A stretch of DNA of 64,000 nucleotides from Squalus acanthias (taxonomy: Eukaryota), in assembly GCA_030390025.1 (NCBI GenBank), contig CM059429.1, positions 143,096,001-143,160,000 of the forward strand. Reading direction: 5' to 3'. A program made the translations under genes and the position numbers. Of the stretch, positions 836 to 61,803 are shown in pieces. Numbering within the stretch: position 1 is the stretch's first letter; each line of letters starts with the position of its first letter. Under the pieces are notes generated by a model. It was not told the origin of the DNA. It did no database searches and saw nothing but the letters and a program-made list of their open reading frames with translations.

Positions 836-2421
836 GGCCTGGATTTTGCGGTCAGTGGCAAAGGAACGGCGCTCGCTGCTAACCTCAAAAAAAGCTGCCC
901 ACAAAGATTTAGCGAGCTCTAGAACGTCTGCTTTTTGATGTCAGTTTCAATTTGGCCTCCTTCTACAGGGAATCTGTGGCGTCCAGCAACAGGGCAGGCA
1001 GCAGGTAGGCTGATCAGCCTATCAGATTGAAGAATTCTCACAGACAGCAAAGCAGGAAGTAAAAAGTAGGGAATATGAATCACATTTAAATCAGTGTACA
1101 GAAGGCGATATAAAAATTGGGACATGCACATAGGGTTAAGGGAGAAACATAAATATCAGACCAAAAACTTAAAAAAATTAATTTTTATTTTATTAAAAAT
1201 CTACAAATTTTAAGGGGGAAAAATTCGGTTGGTTAGCGCCTCCCATTAGCACCATTGGGGGGCGCTAATGGGGCGGTAGGAACTTAGCGCCCGAGCGTGG
1301 TGAGTTTAGCGCCGCTCGCAAAATTGACGAGATGTTTTGCGGCGGCGCTAAACACTACCACCATGATCTCCCACGCCCACAGATCGTGACGTCAGTCGAG
1401 CGTGCAACGCCCTGGTAGCGCCCCGGACCGGATATTGAGTCGCGCCCTCTGCCTTAGCGCCTGCCACTAGGAACAACAGATAGAGGGGAACATTTTCAAG
1501 TCGGGAAGGGGCTGGGGGAGCACTATTTAAAGGCGGGCGCTTCCTGCCTTTTCTTGTCGGCAAAATTTTTGGTTTTAACGCCGTCCTAAGGAGTTTTGGC
1601 CCTCAGCACCATTTTTGAGGTTCCTAAGTGCAAGCTCTTTCCCTGAGCCTATCCATTCGTGCTTCCAACACAATTGCTTTTGAGGTCTCTCCAGGCTGAG
1701 ATTCAAGGCTGCAATGAGCAGGGTGTGGCTTGCCAGCAAGATGGCCCCTCCCCTTTAAGAACTGGATGGCGGCAGTCTGTCTGGCTTCCATAGTAACTGA
1801 CATCGCCTGAGCTTCAGTAGCGTTTTAAGGTAGTGCCTCGCTCACTGACGTTTGCGCCTTAAGAGAGGTGTGTAGCGCCTGATTTAGCGTTCAAACCACC
1901 TCCAGGGGAGATTGAGGTGAATTTTGCAGTCGGAGGCGATAATTAGTGCCGGGCGCTAAACTTTGCCCCCGGCCGATATTAGCGCCCCAAAATGGACGAT
2001 ACTGAATTTTTCCCCCTAAATGTTCTTCTGAGGGAATGAGAATCCACACTTGTAAAATTAGTTTTTCAGGGCCAGAGAGGTTGTTCAGCAGTAATTTAGT
2101 ATTACTGCTGAACAACTTAGTATGCCATTAAAAACTCATTTACTCCTGATTGAACAAGGCTTAACTTTATCATTGCTCCTTACAGCGGGAATAGCGTGTA
2201 AATAGTTGAAGTTCAAGTCAAATCAGTGATTTCTAAATGCTTCCATTTGCGAAGACTACAATAGCGCACCCTGTGGAGGAGCAGGGCATCACTGGCAGCA
2301 ACTTCCAGATTTCTGCGTTTAACTGCACATATGCGGACGCCAGAAGTTGCTGTCAGTTTTACACAGTAATAACAGCGAGTGCTGACAGCCTTGTCGTTAT
2401 TACTACCACAAATTCCGGGCC
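836..2421. mobile_element. Harbinger/PHIS-type MITE (family A), interrupted by a nested MITE
   Basis: Ends GGCCTGGATTTTGCGGT ... ACCACAAATTCCGGGCC are imperfect inverted repeats. The body is homologous to 39823-40901, 22358-22619 and (inverted) 46123-46840. Confidence 0.8.
1214..2016. mobile_element. Young CpG-rich Harbinger-type MITE with TAA target-site duplication
   Basis: Perfect 13-bp TIR GGGGGAAAAATTC/GAATTTTTCCCCC with TAA on both sides; many subterminal TAGCGCC/GGCGCTA motifs. Confidence 0.9.
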
Positions 2422-2790: not shown

Positions 2791-5602
2791 ATTGTTTGAC
2801 ATCCACAGCAGACAGAATTGGACGTCAAAGAGGGTCTACATATTATTATTGATAATAGTTACAGAAAGAACCAGAATACACTTGTCAATAAGTTCAAGTT
2901 CAGAGAAGGACAGTAGAGAGAAAATACATTGAGGAAGAACAGACAAAATCATTGATAACAGGAGAGGACAAAAGAACATGTCCTTGATGTCCATTGCATG
3001 CTGGTCCTATTTCACGTTAACTGGAGAGTATCTAGGGGTGCATTTAGGACATAGGGATCTTGCAACCATACACCACTTACAGACCTCAAAACTGGGCGAT
3101 TAGGGTGGTGTAGTAGTTATGGTACTGGACTCACCCACTGTTCCGGTGAAAAACAGGCCCCGAAGGTTCCAATATGGCGAACACTCAGTCTGCACCGGAA
3201 GTGTGCCACACACCATATTGGTTAGGGCGCCCTGTAGTCATTAGTCTGAAACTGGCATTAGGCCCTTTGCCTGTGAAAATTGCTTAATGCCTATTTCAGA
3301 CCTCTTTGCCAAATTGGGTCTCAAATGAGTGTAGCATGAGCCATGCACGTTGCGGTTAGGTTTGTCTGGCACACAGCAGCCAAACCGCTAGAGGCTGCCA
3401 ACAAAAAGGCAAATCTTTTTTTTTATAATTACCTGAATGTGACGCCAGGAGGAGGAGTGCTCCCGCTGGCTCCACATTTAAACTGCGGGCCGCCCCTGGC
3501 ATGCGCTCACTACAAATATTTTAAAAGTGCATTTTCTTTCATTAGTGCATGCAGATTATGTTTTGCTCTCCACACTGTACCTTCATTTCACTTCTAACAT
3601 CACATTTGTTTTTCTCTCAACACACCTTGACATAAATCTGGCCATTTTCACAAACATAAGCAGGGATAAAAAAGAAACTCGTAGATGCTATTCAAAATAA
3701 TAGATGTTCAGGAGGTGAATTACAGACATTAATGAGGTCGCTTCTTAGTTTGGAACTTACATGTTGATTTGTAGCTGAACCATTCATATATGTACTGACT
3801 CCAACACACCTCAGGGTATTGTGCACTCAATAGTTCACCTAGATGTCTCCTCTAGATCTCCTTTTTAATGTGAACAAGCTATTGCAACTTTAGTAGCATT
3901 AACCCTTTATGGACCAGCTAAGCATTTCTGCACCAAAAAAAAAGATAAACCTTGATAAAAAAATCAAGTAACTCATTTATAGATTGTAGAGTACCTTTGT
4001 AACAAATGAAAGAAATGACTAACCTAAGGAGCAGTTATGCTGCAGATTTTAAGTCAATTTGGTATGATTTTAGCATTGTACTGACTGTGTGTAGTATAAC
4101 TATAATTTAAGTCATGTGATCTGGGTGCAAATCAATTAACCAGAAGTGGCCAGAGACCACCTTTGGGCTTAACCACTTTGCTTCACACTGTTTGCTGTTA
4201 GATTGCAACCCGTGCAAAGGAAAATGTAAAAATACCTAGTGATCTGTTGTATGGTTTCCGATATAAAAGAGCTGGCTATTGTGATGGTTCTTTTCTTATA
4301 GTATAAATTTCACCAACATTTAGACACCAGTGAGCAGAGCTATGTGCCTGTGTTTTAAGTATGCACACAGCTCTGGTTTACCTGAGCACAAAGTGATGCA
4401 CGTGGAGTAGCATAACATCAAACCAGTACCTCTAATACTACATATCGAACCAATACGACTGCAATAATTAACTAACGACTTGCTGGATTTTTCCAGTAAC
4501 AACACAGTAAAACACACTTTTTCTGAAGGAAGAACATGAAAACATATCAAAATGTGTTAAAAAGTGTGGCTTTTGTTTTGATCCCAAACTTTTATTGGCT
4601 TTAATTGGGTTGTAATCATAACTGTTACAATATTTATAACATTGCCATTTCCCTTTCTTCATGGAGCAAAATTGGGATTGATACCATACCAAGCACTGAT
4701 CAGAGCCAAAAAACATGAATAGGATGGTTATTAAGATGGAACGCAAACAATATCATGCTTGTAAAGGTTGTATAGTAGTTCTTTAATGAGTGACGGGCAC
4801 ATAACATATGCATTGCTAGCAAAGGTAAACTATGTTGTCCTTTTGCACATGTCAAATGCCTGGAACTCACTTCAACAGATGAAAAATGCTGTTTATTCCC
4901 TCTGCCTAATATCTCAAAGTGGATCCTAAAAGAATATTTTTCTATTTCTTCTATTGCTTCTCTATTTAGTCTATGATGGCCAGTTATACTATGTTCCAGT
5001 GTTAGTTTATTGATGTTATATATTCATAATCTTGTGTGTGTTATGAATGACTTTGAATGTTTAATGTTAGAATTCACATATAATTACATAAATAGCATTT
5101 GCTGTTTCTTTGTGAATTGACTAATTGTATGGGTGTTAAATGCCATTACAACTTTAAAGACATTTGCACTACCTTGGCTATTAGGAGAGCTGCTAATCTG
5201 ATTTTGACAAATGGGAATAAAGTAGTAAACATACTGTGAATCACTCAGTAGAAGTGTTTGATATGTTCGAAATCAGGAATGGGCAATTATTTGGGCTGGA
5301 GGGCCACTTAACAAATTTTGGTGAGCTGATGAGGGGCACACACACAAAATGAATTGTGTTAACAACAGCTGCCATTAAAATTTGTTACGGCATTTATTGT
5401 ATAAAGAACCCTTCATGTCATTTCCACACTTAATAAAAATAACAACACTTAGTAACATGCTAACGCACATGAAAATAGACAGAGTACACAAACACAATTC
5501 CCAGCCAAAGAAGGTTTAGAATACACAACAAATCTAATCTAATTATTTTCAGACTATTTGTTAAAAGCATCCTTTGTATTAGTCTGCCCATACTTATTTT
5601 TA

Positions 5603-5725
5603 AACATAGAAACATAGAAACATAGAATCTAGGAGCAGGAGTAGGCCATTCGGCCCGTCGAGCCTGCTCCGCCATTCAATACGATCATGGCTGATCATCC
5701 AAATCCAGTACCCTGTCCCTGCTTT
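5603..5725 (-). mobile_element. CR1-type LINE 3' end abutting an HE1 SINE
   Basis: (CATAGAAA)n tail followed by GGAGCAGGAGTAGGCCATTCGGCCC...GATCATGGCTGATC, as in other CR1 3' ends in the window. Confidence 0.75.
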
Positions 5726-6033
5726 AATCCCCACAGTACACATATCCCACCCTACCCCCGTAACCCCACGTATTTAATTCCCCCTAACATATCCCATCCT
5801 ATCCCCATAACCCCACATATTTAATCCCCCCTAACACTAAGGGTCAATTTATCATAGCCAAATCAACCTAACCCACACATTTTTGGACTGTGGGAGGAAA
5901 CCGGAGCACCCGGAGGAAACCCACGCAGACACGGGGAGAATGTGCAAACTCCACACAGACAGTCACCCGAGGTCAGATTCGAACCCGGGTCTCTGGCGCT
6001 GTGAGGCACCAGTGCTAACCACTATGCCACCGT
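5726..6033 (-). mobile_element. HE1-type tRNA-derived V-SINE
   Basis: Minus strand has A box TGGCATAGTGG, B box GGTTCGAATC and V-domain TGTGTGGAGTTTGCACATTCTCCCCGTGTCTGCGTGGGTTTCCTCCGGGTGCTCCGGTTTCCTCCCAC. Closely similar to 39894-40214. Confidence 0.9.
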
Positions 6034-6744
6034 TTAACCCATGCCTTTAAAAAAAACGAAGCTTTATTTTTTTAATGTTATTTTAAACCCATTAACTTGT
6101 ACCCGAGAGCTCAAAATTGGGCAGTGCACATCTTCAGGTGACTGAAAGCACACTGTTATTTCCAAAGTGAAGAGATGACACTTTGCTGTACCTACTATTT
6201 TAATCACCGAACAGATGATCTTAATTTAAAAATTGTTATTTTAGACATGTTGGCTGTTGACATCTGTACACAGCCGTTATGGAAATAAAAATTGAATTAT
6301 GTTCCTTCTGACTGCTTGTCCTTCTATATTAAATCAAACAAAAGGAGACGCAGCAGTGGTCAGTCAACGGTCAAACAGCTTCGAGCAACTGATGAGCAGG
6401 AAAACAGAAACTCAAACTACAACATTGGTAATAACGGTACCTCTTAAATTGGGAATCGTATTCGGGTTCTTGTTCGGCTTTGGTCACGTTTCTGCACTAA
6501 AGCTATCGGAAGGACCCTGCTGGTACTGATTGTAAAATACTCAACAATCTATCACCAGCTGCGAACGGCAGTCCTTTAATACAAATCGGATTTAAGTGGA
6601 ATGATTTGAAGGAGAAGTTTTTGTTTTCTCCTGTCTGACATGGTCCTGCAGACAAGGATAAGCACCGAGGGCCTGAGTCAGACAAAAGGCTCCCGAGTGC
6701 CCGATCACTCCGCACAAACCCAGCGCGCTCCCTTCAACACTTAC

Positions 6745-6830
6745 CCAAAACATTATGTTGAAGCCAAACAAAACATATTTAATGCTAAATAACAGCTAAC
6801 TTCAGGTTCTTTGAAATGTTTCCCGGACAT
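6745..6830 (-). pseudogene. Captured first coding exon of a TSPAN5/TSPAN17 (TspanC8) tetraspanin, with a 5-nt frameshift insertion
   Basis: CTCACC-ATG start. Removing the ATTTA insertion gives MSGKHFKEPEVSCCIKYVLFGFNIMFW, followed by donor GTAAGT. Recalled human TSPAN5 N-terminus is MSGKHYKGPEVSCCIKYFIFGFNVIFW. Confidence 0.88.
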
Positions 6831-8938
6831 GGTGAGCGGGGAGCGGGGGAGCGGGTCGTAAACAGTGAAACCAGGAGCCGGGCGGCCGCCTCTACTGAGG
6901 CTCAACACCAAACACGAGAAGTGAGGGACCGAGGCCCGCCCACCGCATCAGGACACCGAATGGACAAACATTGGGCTTCGGTCAGGCGGCAGTGAACCGA
7001 GGGGGGCGAGTCCGATCCGGCTCACAGCTCCACCCCGTTAGCCCCTGCTCACGGATCCATCGCCCTCGACCAGCGCCGACGCCATAGAGTCCAGTTTGAG
7101 AACCACTGTGCGGGCTGGATAGAAGCAATTGGCAGGTCGGATACGGCCCCTGGGCCGTATTTTGCCCACCACTGTTCTAAATGGTGTTGGGTACTGACAT
7201 ACTATATGACTGTGTCATATTTTGTAAGTTCAATCAGTGTTTGATATATGATTACCAAAAAAACTGCTGAAGTCTGCCTTGATGTATGGATCCTTCATCG
7301 TTTCTGAATCATCTGTCTTAATGTTCAAATTGAGCCCGTTATAGGCTGCAGTTTTATAGTCTTCTCATTTCTTCTAGTGAATTTCAGTTCTTTAGTTCTG
7401 GAAGAAACAAGTATAACTTTCTTCATAAGGACATCTTAGACAAATGTAACACTGATGTTTTAGCAGCACAGTTCCCACTATGCCCTCTCATTGTGAATAA
7501 AGCCTTTGTGTTGTAGATTTACTGACGAAAAAAACCAAATAATTGAGGGATGATCACTGTCTCTTTAAGCATTTACTTTCAGTGATTGGAACCTCCTGAA
7601 GATGTGCGTAATATGTTTAACTAAATCAAATATGATTTTACAATTCATGTAGCAGGTTTATAATAGCCACTTCCTGGGTTAGCAGGGCCTTTTCTCATTG
7701 TTCATTTTCAGGACTCAGAGGGAAGATTATTCTAAGTTTTAAACAATAATCAGCACTGATGACTTTCTTGTTTGAAGTCATTTTACTTCTGTTATTATAG
7801 TTCTTGGAGTTGGATCATCAGAAGTTTTGAATGTAGCAATGGCCATTGTTGATTTTTCAAAGATTTAGATAATGGGAAGAATTGCGATTATACAGCTTAT
7901 TGAATGTTTAACTTTGGGTGTGGCTGGTCAATATTATTATTACTACTATTATTATGGACGTGGCCGTTTTGAACGCCAAACTCACTGAAGAAATAAAATA
8001 GGGCAGGGTGGGAAATTGAAGAGTAGATCTAATTTTTTTCATTAAGGTTTTGTTGTTAAACTGAAGAAAATATGAAGAAACCATAGAATTGAAGAAAACC
8101 TCATAACAATAAATCAATTTATGTGAAGAAGGCATCTACAGTTTTTCACTGAATCAGCTCTCTTGTGACCATTTACCAGAATGACTTGAAAGCAGCCTAG
8201 AGTGGCATTGCGTCCCTCTGAGGAATGAGTTGCTCTCTATTTAGCATAAATCCCTGATGCAGCACATTGTCAATCTAGTGTGCTGCACCAATACATCATC
8301 TTAGTTATTGAAACTTAAACAAACATTAACAACTATCATAATGGCAATTGGAAGTGACTGTTAGAATTGAGAGCCCAATGATCTGGACATTGGAAAGATA
8401 ACGGATCCAGGCTCTTAGACAACCCGAAAGATAGGCATCTGCTGGAAATATTACAAGTGGTTGACCCCACCCTGGCTGTGGATACTCCAAGGGTGGAAAT
8501 CAGTGGTGTATCAGCAATCCTACTCCGCCACACCTACAGCAGTGGATCGGGTCTGAGGAAGTTCTGCTCCAAGGAGATGGAAGCTATGGCAATTCCACTG
8601 AGGAACATAATCCCACCTCCTTACAGGCATCATGGCCTTCTATGGGGCACAAGGAACTTCCACCTGCCCTAACCTTCAGCAGGAATTTTCCTTATGTGTC
8701 TTTGGAGCAGAGACCTGGCATTGCTGACTCTACCCGATATTCTTCCTCCTCTGCTGCTTTCTTGGCTGTTTTAAACCGGGAGTGTAGCCCAGGTCCCCAG
8801 GAAATTTAGGGCTATTCTGCAATTGCATTTCACCGTCACTCATTACTTTTGAATACTCATTAAAAGTATTTTCACAAAATGCTAGAAATACACAACAGGC
8901 TTTCAGCATCAAATGAGAAGAAATAAAGTTAACATTTT

Positions 8939-9579
8939 GGGTGGGTCACATATGCAACATCAACCCTCTTTTTGCTCTTTTTGTTGCTGACCGACCAAAT
9001 GGTCCAAAATGGGTGCAAAATCAGTGGTGCGCCCAATGTGGCCACACAAGGCCACAGCCGGAAGGTCCAAACCATTTCAGGTTTGACCTCATTCGAGTTT
9101 TACCAGCAACCTGCAGGCACCAAACAGCCACTCTGCTGCAGCTTACCGGCTTTCGACGGTGGGTATGGGGTGAGAACAGGCCGGCAGCAGGCCAGAAGAA
9201 TGCTCCTCCAGGCCCCACAAAAAATTTTTAAAAGCCAAAAACTTACCTTTTCCGAAGCGGCCTCCAACAATCCCTTTAAGGACCATTGGTTAGGCCGCTC
9301 AACATCCAGTCCAACTAGGACCAGCGTGCACGGTGCATGCTCCACCCATTTGTGCATTAAAATTGCAATTCCATCCTACATGTGGCATAGGACCCTGATA
9401 TGCATATTTAATCAGCCTCCTGCTTGTTTGGGTGGGAGTGCTGGGCACCCATTTAAAGGCCTGCTTGAAAATTGAATCAGGTGGGCAAATGGGTATCCAA
9501 GGTGCCCACCAGATTTTCCTCTGACCGTTCCCAGTTTTTCAGGCGAGAAACGGACGGCTGGCAGTTGAAAATCAATCCC
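8939..9579. mobile_element. Degenerate Harbinger-type MITE
   Basis: GC-richer island ending TTGAAAATCAATCCC, followed by ATT; left end degenerate. Confidence 0.55.
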
Positions 9580-19054: not shown

Positions 19055-19155
19055 CCGGCTTTTAAATAGAAAATCCGCGCATGCGCAGAATCTTTAACGA
19101 GCTGCGTGGGCCAAAAAAATATTAGAGGGAACATTGATTGAGACGCAAGATCAGG

Positions 19156-20321
19156 ATGGGTGACGGTGATGCCATGACTGCCTTAGATGGGACCTCGGAT
19201 GAGGAGCAAGGTGACCATCAGCAACAGCAGCAGCCTGCTGTGGAGAGACCTGCTGGTGGTCAGCACAGAGGGGAGCAGCAGAGGGGGCGAGCTTGCAGGA
19301 GACACTACCCACATAACAGTATGTACAGACAGAGGCTCAGCTTCCTTGGCCTCTTGGAAGAGCAGTGCTTCAGGAGGCTGAGGTTGTTGCTTCAGGTGGT
19401 GGCAGATATCTGCAGCCTCCTAGAAGAAGACCTGCTCCCTGCTGAACCTGTTTGCCATGCATTACCAGTGGCTGTGAAAGTGACCACCGTCTTCAACTGT
19501 TTTGCCTCTAGATCCTTCCAGGGCACTACCGGAGACATATCCAGGATCTCCCGGTTGACTGCACATAAATGCATAAGGCAGGTCACTGATGGGTTGTTTG
19601 CCAGGGCCGGCAATTATGTCAACTTCGCCTGTGATGACACCAGTCAGAATGAGCGGGCGCTCAGGTTTGCGTCTCTGGCTGGCTTCCCACAGGTACAGGG
19701 TGTCATCGACTGCACACATGTAGCAATCCACGCCCCTCCTGATCAACCAGGAGTGTTCATAAACAGCAAGGGATTCCATTCGATCGGTGTTCAGCTCGTA
19801 TGCAACCACAAGACAAGGTTCATGCAGGTGTGCGCCAGTTTCCTGGAGAGCTGCCATGATGCTTTCATCCTGCAGCCGTCCAAGCTCCCCGACCTCTTTA
19901 GACCTGCAAGCAGACTTAAGAGGTGGCTGCTAGGAGACCCTTCAAACTTGGCTGATGACACCCATGAGAAACCCCACCAATGAATCCCAAAAGTGGTACA
20001 ACAATAGCGATATGATCAACAGAGGTGTTATTGAGCAAGCGATCGGCATGGTCAGGTGCCTGGACAGATCTAACATGCTGCAATCCATCAGTACTCGCCA
20101 GCCAGGGTCTCCAGAATGATCGTGGTCTGCACAACATTGCGCAGCAGTGTGGATTGGAGCTGCAGGAGGAACAAGGCGCTGAACACACATCGTCTGCGGA
20201 TGAATCCAATGAAGAGGAGGAGGAGGAGGAGGAGGTGAAGATGGCAGCCCCAGTGCAGCACCAGCTGCTCACATTGCTGCCCGGATGCTCGGGATTCCCT
20301 TCTAGCTGTAGGTTCAGTTAG
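19156..20321 (+). pseudogene. Harbinger DDE transposase (HARBI1-like), frameshifted
   Basis: Motifs GFPQVQGVIDCTHVAI, HDAFIL and WLLGD; after a frameshift, WLMTP...VIEQAIGM...RCLDRS; then LHNIA and an acidic tail. Confidence 0.92.
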
Positions 20322-39822: not shown

Positions 39823-40901
39823 GGCCCGGATTTTGCAGTCATTCGCGAACGAATGGCACTTGCTGTTCATTACGCTTAGAGTTGCCCACAGTTCACAGAA
39901 TCACAGAATCCCCACAGTACAGATAGAGACCATTTTCGGCCCATCAAGCCTGCACCGACACATATCCCACCCTATCCCCGTAACCCCACGTATTTAATCC
40001 CCCCCTAACACTAAGGGTCAATTTATCATAGCCAAATCAACCTAACCCGCACATCTTTGGACTGTGGGAGGAAACCGGAGCACCCGGAGGAAACCCACGC
40101 AGACACAGGGAGAATGTGCAAACTCCACACAGACAGTCACCCGAGGCCGGATTCGAACCTGGGTCCCTGGCGCTGTGAGGCAACAGTTCTAACCACTATG
40201 CCACCGTGCTGCCCAAGTTCTGTGGGCTTTTACACTCAGATTAGCGGTAATCAGACAGTCAAAACAGCGCGGCACCCTCTACAGGGGATCTGGGACCTGT
40301 GTGAATGGTCACGCAACAACCAATCAGATTGAAGAATCCTTACTGAGGCACGCAGAGTCTAAACCAGGAAATGTAAGTTTGAATATTTAATTCAATGTAA
40401 AATCATGTACAGAAAGCAAAATAAAGAGAGGGATAGAAAGATGGGATTAAGAGAGAGAGATAAAAGAGAAAGAAATAAAAAGTAAAATAAAATTTAATTT
40501 AATTTTTTTTAAATCTCCAACGATAATTAAAATCTGAAGGAATGAAACTCCACACTTGTAAAAGTTCATTTTCAGTGCCAGAGAGGTTGTTTGCCAGTAA
40601 TTAATCTTATCACGCCATTAAAAAATCACTTACACTTGAATGGACAAGCCCTAACCTTTCCTGGCGTGTTTAGTGGGTAAGTATCGCAACTTCATGCCCG
40701 TCATGTGTTTGAATGCGGAGTCTCTCGGCAAGGTACCGGTGTAGCGAAGCTTGTGGAGGAACAGGGCAACTTGGACAGCAACTTCCTGATTTCTACGTTT
40801 AACTGCGCATGTGCGGAAGCTGGAAGTTGCTGTCCGATTTACTCCTTAATAACGATGAGTGCTGATAGCCTCGCTGTTATTCTTACCGCAAAATCCGGGC
40901 C
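39823..40901. mobile_element. Family-A MITE containing an HE1 SINE
   Basis: TIR GGCCCGGATTTTGC/GCAAAATCCGGGCC; homologous to 836-2421. Confidence 0.88.
39894..40214 (-). mobile_element. HE1-type V-SINE, near full length
   Basis: Minus-strand head GGGCAGCACGGTGGCATAGTGG, B box GGTTCGAATCC, V-domain and CR1-like tail (CACAGAAT)n. Confidence 0.92.
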
Positions 40902-54569: not shown

Positions 54570-55268
54570 CACCGGTTCTCAAACTGGTGGGTCATGAAGC
54601 TCGTGCAGACAGAGCATGGCAACAGGCTGAAAACAGCAGAATCAATAGTCTAAAAATAAATGTAATTTGAATAATGCGGATACTGCAGTGGTTGTGTAGT
54701 TGTTCTTGTCATTTGGCTATAGTCCACATCAAAGCTCCTCTCCTCAGCAGAGACCCACACACATTTAGTTATCTTTTCACATTTTCTCCCCTTCTGAAGT
54801 TCAGATGACCCACTCTCTTTGCTTCCGTGGCTCAAAACCATTCATTCCCACTCTCTGCGAACTCTTTCGATCACTCAAACTTGCTCTTCCTGTTCTCTGC
54901 GCTTCTTCAGGGGCTCCAGTCTACTTCCTCTGCACTCCTGCAGTCTCCAGGCAGCAGAAAAGAGAAGGGATGGGAGCAAGAGAGAGAGAGAGAGAATCAG
55001 AAGTAAATGAGAGTGAGAGAGAAACAAGTGAAGGAGATAGAAATTGAAGAGAAAAGCAGAGGGAAGAAGGAAAGAGAGAAACAGGAAGAAAGTCAAAAGC
55101 AGAAGGAAAGGAGGAAGAGAGAGAGAATGAGAGACATGTTTGTAGACTTCCTGGTATCAGTATCCTTAGCTAGGTCGGCATGACAGGCTATGAGAATGTT
55201 TTGGTGTAGCCTACCTGGAAAAAGTTTGAAATGGTGGCGCCCAAATTAAAAATGTTTGAGAATCACTG
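54570..55268. mobile_element. hAT-type non-autonomous element
   Basis: Ends CACCGGTTCTCAAAC / GTTTGAGAATCACTG; TAGA-containing but poorly matching flanks. Confidence 0.65.
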
Positions 55269-60063: not shown

Positions 60064-60174
60064 CATGGACAGGATACCTGGGCATCATTAATGAAGAAGG
60101 ATCCAGATATCAACACATCAAACAAAACACTTGGAAAAATGGTTGACTGGGCTTTTTGTTTTCCATCTTGACAG

Positions 60175-60278
60175 ATGCTGACGGTATGAACCTGAATGAC
60201 CCTAAGTTGTGTTACATTCTGGATGGAATTCTCTTTGTGTATGGGATTATAATCACTGCTCTCTACCTTAAACTGAGG
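60175..60278 (+). CDS. CD247: CD3 zeta chain, transmembrane exon (exon 2), phase 1 to phase 0
   Basis: Acceptor TTTTGTTTTCCATCTTGACAG, donor GTAAGT. 104 bp encoding (D)ADGMNLNDPKLCYILDGILFVYGIIITALYLKLR with the DPKLCYxLDG dimerisation Cys and TM Asp; length and phases match the recalled mammalian CD247 exon 2. Confidence 0.92.
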
Positions 60279-61803
60279 GTAAGTCATTTACCATTATATT
60301 TAACTGTTAAGCTTCAAGGGAACCATAAATTGTATATTTGTTATAAATAGAGGGAGATAGTGTTATATTGCATAGGTCTCCAGGTTACTCCATACCATTA
60401 ATGTAATTCTTCAAAATGTACAGGTCTAAACTGTATGGGGAGCAAATCAGTCAACCTTATTCCAGTGATTCATGTGCAGTATGCTCGGAGTTTTAGTGTG
60501 TGCCACGATCTAGATGTAGATGTATCGATGTGCTGCAGCATCGAGTGGTAGGACACAGCACCCATGATTTCCCACCCAAGAAGTTTCCAGGTTCGGCCAA
60601 ATACCGTGTAGACTAGGAAGGGTGGATCTCAAGTTATTTTGGTAATGTTAATTTGGTAATCTAACTTTACACAGTCACAGCAAAAACATTTAAAATGGAA
60701 TAGTAACAAACTCCCCCATGGGAGTTGCATAGCTATGCACACAATGGGGACGTGCTCCTAGACAGATAAGGCATTATTTTTTAATGAGATACATTTTTCT
60801 TCTTTATTGCAGCATGAATTATTAGAGCTGGACATTTTTTCCCCTTAGCACGAGGCATCCATGGCCATTACTAGCATAGAAAGAACATTTATCCCAAGGT
60901 TTCAGTGCTTCACCTCTTTTCCAAACATTAAATTAATAAAACCACACAGATTAAAACTACATTTGTTTAAAAACAAATAGTGGGAAGATTGTCCATTCAC
61001 CTATGGGAACATTTTGTTCCCATTCCTGGTGCAGATCATAAAAATCTGACAAGTTAGCACACCAAGGACTCCATAATCATTTGACAACAATTACCACATT
61101 AATTTTACCATACACAAGGAAATACTTATTTCTTACCACAGTGTAACTGCCACCCTACTACAGAACAGAAATAGCACTAGTGTCAATGAAAAGAATATTT
61201 CGTCCTTAGCTCCATATGGTTTATCTTGCTTGCAAGTCCTATGATGGCATTTATTTAACATTACCATTCACAAATAAATTATTAAAGTTTGGAGATTTTT
61301 CTAATTTCACGTTACATTTTTGTAGAAAAGTGTCCTCTACACACAAGACATTGTTGATGCAGGATATTTGTGAATGCATGCACTTCTCTTTGTAATTTCC
61401 CAATTATTTTTTAATTATCCTTTCAGCACTCCATGGGCCACACATGAATTGGGGTTGAAAGGGCAAACAGGTGACCTGCTCTCTTGCCTCTTATGCTGGC
61501 TGCAAGGAGTAGCAGGAAAGTGGTCTGATTGAACCTCTCTCAGATTCCCTCCCTCCACCACCTTTTGGAAAAGTGCATGAGTAGCACCTCCCCCGAGCAT
61601 GGCTGAGATTGGTAACTATTGGTAACCCAGTAGTGTGGGAGACTGTGGGTGTCTTGATACAGGATTCTCATCACACAAAGGACAAATTGAAAAATCTTTA
61701 TAATTTCTTGTAGTATGAGAATATACAGTAATATGTTTGTAGCAGGATTGAAAAATGAAATTCATTTTTGCAAAATGTCCTTTTTTTAATTTTGTTTTCA
61801 AAG

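What the first reader, a model, noticed from the sequence alone, without database searches (positions are those of the whole stretch)
5274..7174. Pack-type hAT transposon that captured the 5' end of a TSPAN5/TSPAN17 tetraspanin gene
Seen: hAT-like ends with a 7/8-matching 8-bp TSD enclose, on the minus strand, a CpG-rich leader (about 7090-6831) and CTCACC-ATG. Next come an 86-nt exon reading MSGKHFKEPEVSCCIKYVLFGFNIMFW once a 5-nt insertion is removed, a GTAAGT donor and intron-like DNA; no exon 2 follows. Known: this matches the N-terminus of TSPAN5/TSPAN17 (TspanC8 ADAM10 regulators); Pack-type gene capture is well described in plants (Pack-MULE, Pack-CACTA, Pack-hAT) and much less so in vertebrates. 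Inference: retention of the donor and intron means capture at the DNA level, not retrocopying. The element may be a multicopy family spreading a host CpG-island leader plus first exon through a shark genome, here antisense to CD247.
Basis: partly seen in the sequence, partly recalled or inferred. Interest (0 to 1): 0.85.

Follow-up and report, generated by a model that had tools for sequence, protein, structure and literature searches.

The report
Transposon carrying a tetraspanin gene start
A 1.9-kb relic of a cut-and-paste (hAT-type) transposon carries the CpG-rich leader, the now broken first exon and some intron of a tetraspanin gene, which is an example of a known but seldom documented way in which transposons copy pieces of host genes in vertebrates.

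Summary
Window 5274-7174 is bounded by true hAT-type MITE ends. A scan with the right-hand terminus found at least 120 metagenome contigs holding the same terminus. In those, 59 of 85 candidate elements have 8-bp target duplications (36 exact), mostly on 300-350-nt MITEs. TA sits at flank positions 4-5 in 106 of 121. The window's ATTTAGAA/ATTTCGAA duplication fits this pattern. Both window ends align to these MITEs above every shuffle.

Between the ends lie a CpG island (GC 0.66, CpG o/e 0.89) and an ATG exon broken by 5 extra bases. Its second piece hits only tetraspanins in the PDB (4 of 4). A GTAAGT donor, intron-like DNA and a nested SINE follow. No exon 2 was found downstream.

So a Pack-type hAT with a DNA-level copy of a tetraspanin 5' end is well supported. 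Three claims are not shown: the TSPAN5/17 assignment (recall only), copy number with parental locus, and any expression. CD3-zeta's TM exon lies 53 kb downstream on the other strand. Pack-TIRs, including Pack-hAT, are already described in vertebrates (PMC8277862). This is a new member of a known kind.

The parts
7175..7182 (-). Target-site duplication, copy next to the 5' end (ATTTAGAA on the minus strand)
   Evidence: T-A at positions 4-5, as in 106 of 121 flanks of the related MITE termini.
7109..7174 (-). 5' end of a hAT-type MITE (family A), starting CAGTGGTGGGCAAA
   Evidence: at least 120 metagenome contigs hold the terminus pattern; 91 blastn matches, all within 7198-7109; bases beyond the search pattern (7149-7106) align at score 31 against a shuffled maximum of 23.
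7091..7108 (-). 18-nt fragment identical to the terminus type of a second hAT-like MITE family (family B), same orientation, at the junction with the cargo
   Evidence: 0.05 matches expected by chance in the window; 7 such termini (2 mismatches or fewer) in the 745 kb of fetched loci, most preceded by TA-centred flanks.
6831..7090 (-). CpG-island-like leader (promoter / 5' UTR-like) ending in CTCACC before the ATG
   Evidence: 260 nt, GC 0.658, 25 CpG, o/e 0.89. for the sequence.
6745..6830 (-). Tetraspanin-type first exon, now a pseudo-exon: ATG at 6830, 5 extra bases at 6786-6790 break the frame
   Evidence: the second piece hits CD9, CD53 and CD81 (twice), which is 4 of 4 PDB hits, at the start of TM1. 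Atlas lead to short tetraspanin clusters (0.82, lead only).
6739..6744 (-). GTAAGT splice-donor consensus directly after the exon
6041..6738 (-). Intron-like DNA with raised CpG content (part of the CpG-island shore)
   Evidence: CpG o/e 0.75 over 6041-6743, and no other copy in the window; no Pfam family for its 76-aa stop-free segment.
5607..6040 (-). Nested SINE-like repeat, same orientation as the exon (boundaries approximate)
   Evidence: copy at 39958-40207 (94.9% over 117 nt, 90.8% over 65 nt). Its tail is shared with 6 other places in the window.
5322..5606 (-). AT-rich, CpG-poor internal DNA of unknown origin (further intron of the cargo, or the element's own interior)
   Evidence: CpG o/e 0.20 over 5274-5606, and no other copy in the window apart from a few bases at its SINE edge; no match to the fetched MITEs.
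5274..5321 (-). 3' end of the hAT-type MITE (family A), ending TTGCCCATTCCTG
   Evidence: the last 48 nt align to MITE 3' ends at score 39 against a shuffled maximum of 28 (30 shuffles). One search gives the 3' ends of the 59 bounded elements.
5266..5273 (-). Target-site duplication, copy next to the 3' end (ATTTCGAA on the minus strand; one change)

Best explanation
This is a Pack-type non-autonomous hAT element. It is a MITE whose two ends (66 nt and 48 nt) now enclose about 1.3 kb copied at the DNA level from the 5' end of a tetraspanin gene, plus a later SINE. The copied part comprises a CpG-island leader, the first coding exon with its splice donor, and the start of intron 1.

Shown:
- Both ends belong to a hAT-type MITE family that makes 8-bp, TA-centred target duplications.
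- The window element has such a duplication.
- The cargo has the anatomy of a gene start, and its exon encodes a tetraspanin TM1 start.
- The exon is dead, because 5 extra bases bring a stop.

Inferred:
- The cargo was written into the MITE by repair synthesis with template switching after a break in the element. This is the gap-filling / FoSTeS-type route described for animal Pack-TIRs. The 18-nt piece of a second MITE family at the junction would be a trace of a switch between templates.
- I lean to a single-copy event, possibly made in place in an older MITE, over a family that spread.
- The high CpG content of the cargo beside CpG-poor flanks means it is either young or still unmethylated.
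For: Ends:
- at least 120 contigs hold the terminus pattern.
- 59 of 85 candidate elements have a TSD of 7/8 or better, and 36 are exact.
- TA at flank positions 4-5 in 106 of 121. The subterminal alignment scores 31 against a shuffled maximum of 23.
- the 3' end scores 39 against a shuffled maximum of 28.
- the window TSD matches at 7 of 8, and this is the only CAG/CAG pair in the window.

Cargo:
- CpG o/e is 0.89 in the leader and 0.75 in the intron-like DNA, against 0.24-0.28 in the flanks.
- ATG, frame break and GTAAGT.
- 4 of 4 PDB hits are tetraspanins, at the start of TM1.
- no exon 2.

Mechanism and precedent: PMC8277862, abstract and passages.

Second-family terminus at the junction.
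Against:
- The related MITEs come from metagenome contigs of unknown, probably distant hosts. The shark's own family consensus is unknown, so part of what I call cargo (5322-5606) could be the element's own interior.
- The tetraspanin call rests on a 14-residue match with best E 0.075. Pfam gave no tetraspanin hit.
- A generic TIR+TSD pair of this quality is common by chance.
- The lean to single copy rests on priors from one paper and on CpG contrasts, not on a count.
Confidence: 0.7

Rival explanations
1. One reading: the composite is one member of a multicopy Pack-hAT family. It was built once, was then moved by a hAT transposase supplied in trans, and spreads a CpG-island leader and a spliceable first exon through the genome.
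For: - The 8-bp duplication brackets the whole composite, as expected if the composite itself was inserted here.
- PMC8277862 states that multicopy Pack-TIRs tend to capture GC-rich regions, and this cargo is GC-rich.
- An unchecked first-reader note reports a cargo-carrying hAT element elsewhere in this genome.
Against: - The window holds one copy only.
- The duplication is equally explained by insertion of the plain MITE before the cargo was added.
- No autonomous hAT was seen in the window.
Confidence: 0.25
2. The ends are not one element. A native or segmentally duplicated tetraspanin 5' end happens to be bracketed by the remains of two separate MITE insertions, one keeping its 5' end and the other its 3' end, and the 7/8 flank match is chance.
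For: - MITE ends are short and such elements are common.
- Flank pairs matching at 7/8 beside weak inverted repeats arise often by chance (29 observed, 25.9 expected).
- TA-centred targets make flank matches easier.
Against: - The two ends are the correct, complementary halves of one family, in the right inward orientation. They are the only exact CAGNNNTGGGCAA sites in 64 kb.
- The 8-mers match exactly at the element boundaries.
- The CpG-poor flanks change to cargo only inside the ends.
Confidence: 0.1
3. The exon is the live first exon of a real tetraspanin gene that continues to the left of the window, and the 5 extra bases are an assembly error.
For: - The CpG island is well kept (o/e 0.89).
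- The start context and donor are good.
- Only 6.7 kb of downstream sequence could be examined, and first introns can be far longer.
Against: - The exon, leader and intron start lie inside a transposon with a target duplication.
- The frame is broken.
- No further tetraspanin exon was found in the window.
- DNA runs of a second sample of the same organism hold 0.79 of the words of the stretch, though the insertion itself could not be inspected.
Confidence: 0.05

Closest known systems
Animal Pack-TIRs, e.g. Pack-hAT-N8_XT of the western clawed frog (Tan et al. 2021, PMC8277862; abstract and passages read)
   Same: A non-autonomous TIR element of the hAT superfamily whose ends enclose a DNA-level copy of host sequence, including exon plus neighbouring intron. 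The proposed origin is the same: gap filling or replication template switching. The paper also notes GC-rich cargo for multicopy cases.
   Different: - The host here is said to be a shark, and 'shark' does not occur in that paper's main text. Its species list is in supplements that I could not open.
- The cargo here is specifically a promoter-like CpG island plus a first exon.
- Copy number and parent are unknown here, whereas that study defined Pack-TIRs by finding the parent.
Plant Pack-MULE / Pack-CACTA / Pack-hAT ('Pack-TYPE') elements (PMC8903248; title and abstract seen in the listing only)
   Same: TIR ends plus captured gene fragments at the DNA level, with introns retained.
   Different: Those are in plants, are often multicopy and often hold fragments of several genes. 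Here there is one fragment in one known copy.
The hAT-type MITE family seen in JGI metagenome contigs (loci L001-L120)
   Same: - The same 5' terminus by the search pattern, with homology running on to about 65 nt.
- A similar 3' terminus.
- An 8-bp TA-centred target duplication.
   Different: - Those are mostly 300-350 nt without gene cargo, and the window element is 1901 nt.
- Their hosts are unknown.
- Identity outside the first 23 nt is only about 75-80%.
- I could not name the family, because no transposon library (Repbase, Dfam) was on hand.
Helitron gene capture in bats (PMC4224331, PMC4778049; titles and abstracts seen in the listing only)
   Same: A vertebrate DNA transposon carrying host promoter and exon fragments.
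   Different: Helitrons are rolling-circle elements without TIRs or target duplications. The ends and the duplication here are hAT-type.

Membership tests
hAT-superfamily non-autonomous element (MITE) | 8-bp target-site duplication | tested here: met
   7 of 8 bases match at the exact boundaries.
hAT-superfamily non-autonomous element (MITE) | Short terminal inverted repeats | tested here: met
   10 of the first 13 bases match, with CAG at both ends. These are the only two exact CAGNNNTGGGCAA sites in the window, and they face inward.
hAT-superfamily non-autonomous element (MITE) | Ends homologous to elements that are demonstrably mobile (many copies, each with its own duplication) | tested here: met
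   At least 120 contigs hold the terminus. 59 of 85 candidate elements are bounded by a TSD of 7/8 or better, and 36 are exact. Some loci are the same insertion seen in two samples. The alignments beat all shuffles.
hAT-superfamily non-autonomous element (MITE) | A hAT transposase that recognises these ends | not testable with these tools
   No autonomous partner is in the window. The superfamily call rests on the 8-bp duplication and the terminus type.
Pack-TIR (Pack-hAT) | Internal sequence is host gene DNA, not transposon DNA | tested here: inconclusive
   The gene-start anatomy and the tetraspanin TM1 match support it. The shark family's own interior is unknown. 5322-5606 is unassigned.
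Pack-TIR (Pack-hAT) | A parental locus elsewhere in the same genome whose homology stops at the transposon ends | not testable with these tools
No assembly of this genome was searchable. Protein look-ups were blank.
Pack-TIR (Pack-hAT) | Introns kept (DNA-level copy, not a retrocopy) | tested here: met
   GTAAGT and non-coding DNA follow the exon. There is no poly(A) and no further exon.
Tetraspanin (Pfam PF00335) | Match to the family profile above its cut-off | tested here: not met
   Neither piece gave a tetraspanin hit. A 27-residue fragment is too short to reach the cut-off. Only the TM1 start is matched: 4 of 4 PDB hits, best E 0.075.
TspanC8 subgroup (TSPAN5/TSPAN17) | Eight cysteines in the large extracellular loop | tested here: not met
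   Only a first exon is present and no later exon is in the window. The fragment can at most derive from such a gene. It is not a member gene.
TspanC8 subgroup (TSPAN5/TSPAN17) | N-terminal residues specific to TSPAN5/17 orthologues | not tested
No TSPAN5/17 sequence could be obtained. The first piece has no PDB match.
CpG island (usual criteria as I recall them: over 200 nt, GC over 0.5, o/e over 0.6) | Length, GC and CpG o/e | tested here: met
   260 nt, GC 0.658, o/e 0.89. Methylation state was not testable.

The most novel reading that the evidence does not exclude
The composite is a young, still mobile, multicopy Pack-hAT family of a cartilaginous fish. It scatters an unmethylated CpG-island promoter with a spliceable first exon, acting as a natural promoter and exon trap that creates chimeric or antisense transcripts at its landing sites, here upstream of the CD3-zeta TM exon.
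Probability: 0.1. Interest if true: 0.65.

Novelty: new member of a known kind. Interest (0 to 1): 0.35.

Why it matters
Capture of host gene pieces by TIR transposons is well studied in plants. In animals it rests largely on one survey (PMC8277862). A clear case from a cartilaginous fish, carrying a whole promoter-like CpG island plus a first exon and donor, would extend the phenomenon to the base of jawed vertebrates. It would also offer a natural test of whether a relocated CpG island stays unmethylated and drives new transcripts. As it stands it is one dead copy with unknown parent and copy number, so it is a tidy annotation and not a discovery.

Tried and rejected
1. Reads. One search listed 24 runs: 5 DNA runs of organism A with shares 0.79-0.88, other organisms at 0.31 or less, and possible RNA runs at 0.09-0.25. 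Depth, variants, empty sites and splicing were therefore not examined.

2. Protein route to other copies or to the parent.
- The search for homologous proteins with the 52-aa leader/exon ORF and with the 67-aa second-frame piece found no candidate. That tool sees only proteins of 0.55-1.75 times the query's length.
- The exact look-up of 10 ORFs of the element found 0 of 10 in the collection.

3. Family assignment of the exon.
- Pfam on the two pieces gave no tetraspanin, only a chance-level zinc-knuckle hit at E 0.18.
- The first piece against the PDB gave 0 hits at E up to 10.
- The 67-aa piece against the PDB was dominated by chance ClC matches, with 4 tetraspanin sequences among 42 hits.
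- Shortening to 20 aa left only the 4 tetraspanins.
- The Atlas gave a 0.82 lead only.
- A paper search for the first five residues found nothing relevant.

4. Earlier notes of this scan. Nothing lay near the place. The words tetraspanin, TSPAN5, TSPAN17 and CD247 were met in no finding. The sequence look-up was blank.

5. A paper search for the terminus string found 0 papers.

6. Rejected reading, retrocopy: the donor and intron-like DNA are kept.

7. Rejected reading, the ends as chance: they are homologous to a mobile family.

8. I did not use the search of protein representatives. My estimate was that 13-residue pieces cannot reach significance among 1.84 billion proteins.

9. I did not identify the hosts of the metagenome contigs.

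Full report
THE OBSERVATION

On the minus strand the stretch begins CAGTGGTGGGCAAA at 7174 and ends TTGCCCATTCCTG at 5274. The two ends match at 10 of their first 13 bases. The flanking 8-mers match at 7 of 8: + strand TTCGAAAT at 5266-5273 and TTCTAAAT at 7175-7182.

Inside, in order:
- A 260-nt leader (7090-6831) with GC 0.658 and CpG o/e 0.89.
- CTCACC-ATG, with the ATG at 6830.
- An 86-nt exon ending at 6745.
- GTAAGT.

From the ATG the frame reads MSGKHFKEPEVSC and stops 12 codons later. A second frame reads IKYVLFGFNIMFW up to the donor. The offset is the five bases 6786-6790.

ARE THE ENDS MORE THAN CHANCE?

Taken alone, no. Pairs with a flank match of 7/8 or better beside an inverted repeat of 10/13 or better, 300-5000 nt apart, number 29 in the window against a mean of 25.9 in 15 shuffles. 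Requiring CAG or TAG at both ends leaves only this pair, and 1 pair arose across all 15 shuffles. Each terminus is unique in the window. The two are the only exact CAGNNNTGGGCAA sites in the window.

The decisive evidence came from outside the window.
These hold 121 termini.
- 85 of the termini had a candidate opposite terminus within 8 kb. 59 of those have an 8-bp duplication matching at 7/8 or better, and 36 are exact. Most elements are 300-350 nt, with a range of 50-1667 nt.
- For each terminus I kept the candidate with the fewest flank mismatches, which flatters the count a little. Several loci are the same insertion seen in two samples.
- The outer 8-mer has T-A at positions 4-5 in 106 of 121. 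The window's ATTTAGAA fits this. Its partner ATTTCGAA has one change at the A.
- Beyond the 23 nt used for the scan, window 7149-7106 aligns to the subterminal part of one subfamily (L094, L027, L078) at score 31, against a maximum of 23 in 50 shuffles. 7 of 121 termini beat every shuffle.
- The last 48 nt of the window element align to the 3' ends of these MITEs at score 39, against a maximum of 28 in 30 shuffles.
- By blastn the only part of the element that matches the fetched loci is 7198-7109.

So 5274-7174 is bounded by the two proper ends of one hAT-type MITE family and carries about 1.8 kb that those MITEs lack.

WHAT IS INSIDE

*CpG content.* CpG o/e is 0.89 in the leader and 0.75 over the 703 nt after the exon. 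It is 0.20 over 5274-5606 (the AT-rich stretch 5322-5606 together with the 3' end) and 0.24-0.28 in the flanks. This is the profile of a CpG island with its shore.

*The exon.* Its second piece, sent as a 20-residue query, found four sequences in the whole PDB at E up to 10. All four are tetraspanins: CD9 at E 0.075, a CD53 chimera, and CD81 twice. Each aligns at the very start of TM1. The 67-residue version showed the same four among 42 weak hits. The Atlas gave short tetraspanin clusters as a lead at 0.82. Pfam gave no tetraspanin hit, and the first piece has no PDB match.

The exon is therefore a tetraspanin first exon. TspanC8 proteins as ADAM10 regulators: abstracts seen in the listing.

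*The SINE.* A SINE-like repeat occupies about 5607-6040, with a copy at 39958-40207.

*The junction.* Between MITE end and cargo lies an 18-nt string (7108-7091). It is the terminus type of a second hAT-like MITE family, with 0.05 matches expected by chance in the window. 7 such termini occur in the fetched loci.

*No second exon.* No tetraspanin TM2 motif occurs in any frame of the window. Of 21 stop-free minus-strand segments of 50 aa or more downstream, I scanned 10 and none hit tetraspanin. Only 6.7 kb lies downstream within the window.

SURROUNDINGS

A CD3-zeta TM exon is at 60168-60284 on the + strand (E 4.7e-12 to human CD3-zeta residues 18-56). It lies 53 kb downstream and on the opposite strand to the cargo. 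I did not find exon 1 of that gene, so 'inside CD247' is not shown. The rest of the window is largely LINE-type ORFs and other repeats.

HOW IT MOST LIKELY AROSE

*Shown.* There is a hAT-type MITE with a target duplication. It encloses a DNA-level copy of a gene start, with donor and intron kept, so it is not a retrocopy. The exon is dead.

*Inferred.* The cargo was copied into the MITE by repair synthesis with template switching. This is the route that Tan et al. propose for animal Pack-TIRs (PMC8277862; abstract and passages read). They describe gap filling without transposition for most single-copy cases, and template switching followed by transposition for multicopy ones. The fragment of a second MITE family at the junction fits a switch between templates.

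The duplication shows only that a hAT element was inserted here. It does not show whether the cargo was already on board. I lean to a single-copy origin, but no count supports this.

The high CpG content of the cargo means either youth or lasting protection from methylation.

WHAT COULD NOT BE DONE

I worked beside that stretch afterwards. Copy number, the parental locus, empty sites in relatives, confirmation of the five extra bases and any splicing from the donor therefore remain untested. Protein look-ups gave nothing.

COMPARISON AND NOVELTY

Pack-TIRs are described in animals. The survey found 370 in 100 genomes, with 8 in zebrafish, 25 in western clawed frog and 38 in American alligator. 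It includes a named Pack-hAT, and reports transcription and chimeras for a proportion. 'Shark' does not occur in that paper's main text. Its species list is in supplements that I could not open.

I found no paper with the terminus string. I made no search for shark Pack elements beyond, so I claim only that I did not meet one.

VERDICT

This is a new member of a known kind, of modest interest unless it proves to be multicopy and active.

Noticed in passing
window 7091-7108 (minus strand): An 18-nt string that is the terminus type of a second hAT-like MITE family sits 66 nt inside the first terminus, in the same orientation, exactly at the start of the CpG-rich cargo. No partner end is in the element. 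In locus L066 the two families are also nested, the other way round.
   Followed up: partly
window 60168-60284 (+ strand): Exon encoding the CD3-zeta transmembrane region (E 4.7e-12 to human CD3-zeta residues 18-56; Fc-epsilon-RI gamma is weaker at 1e-9). No ITAM exon or exon 1 was found by simple motif scans of the window.
   Followed up: partly
window 54570-54587 (+ strand): A second-family-type terminus with 2 mismatches (CACCGGTTCTCAAACTGG). It may be the end of another MITE. Its surroundings were read but not analysed.
   Followed up: no
window 39958-40207: Another copy of the SINE-like repeat nested in the element (91-98% identical over the aligned pieces). The SINE's 3' tail is shared with 6 other places, several beside LINE-type ORFs.
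   Followed up: no
window 19138-19983 (+ strand): A 281-aa ORF that looks by eye like a PIF/Harbinger-type transposase. Not scanned against any library.
   Followed up: no
loci L001-L120 (JGI metagenome contigs): Contigs from about 20 sample series hold many young copies of the MITE family with exact 8-bp duplications, so these 'metagenomes' contain much eukaryotic host DNA. One element (L029) is 1667 nt long with an exact duplication and may carry cargo of its own.
   Followed up: no
window 1200-2100 and 8400-9500: Two further stretches with G+C of about 0.5 or more, against a background of about 0.35. Not examined.
   Followed up: no
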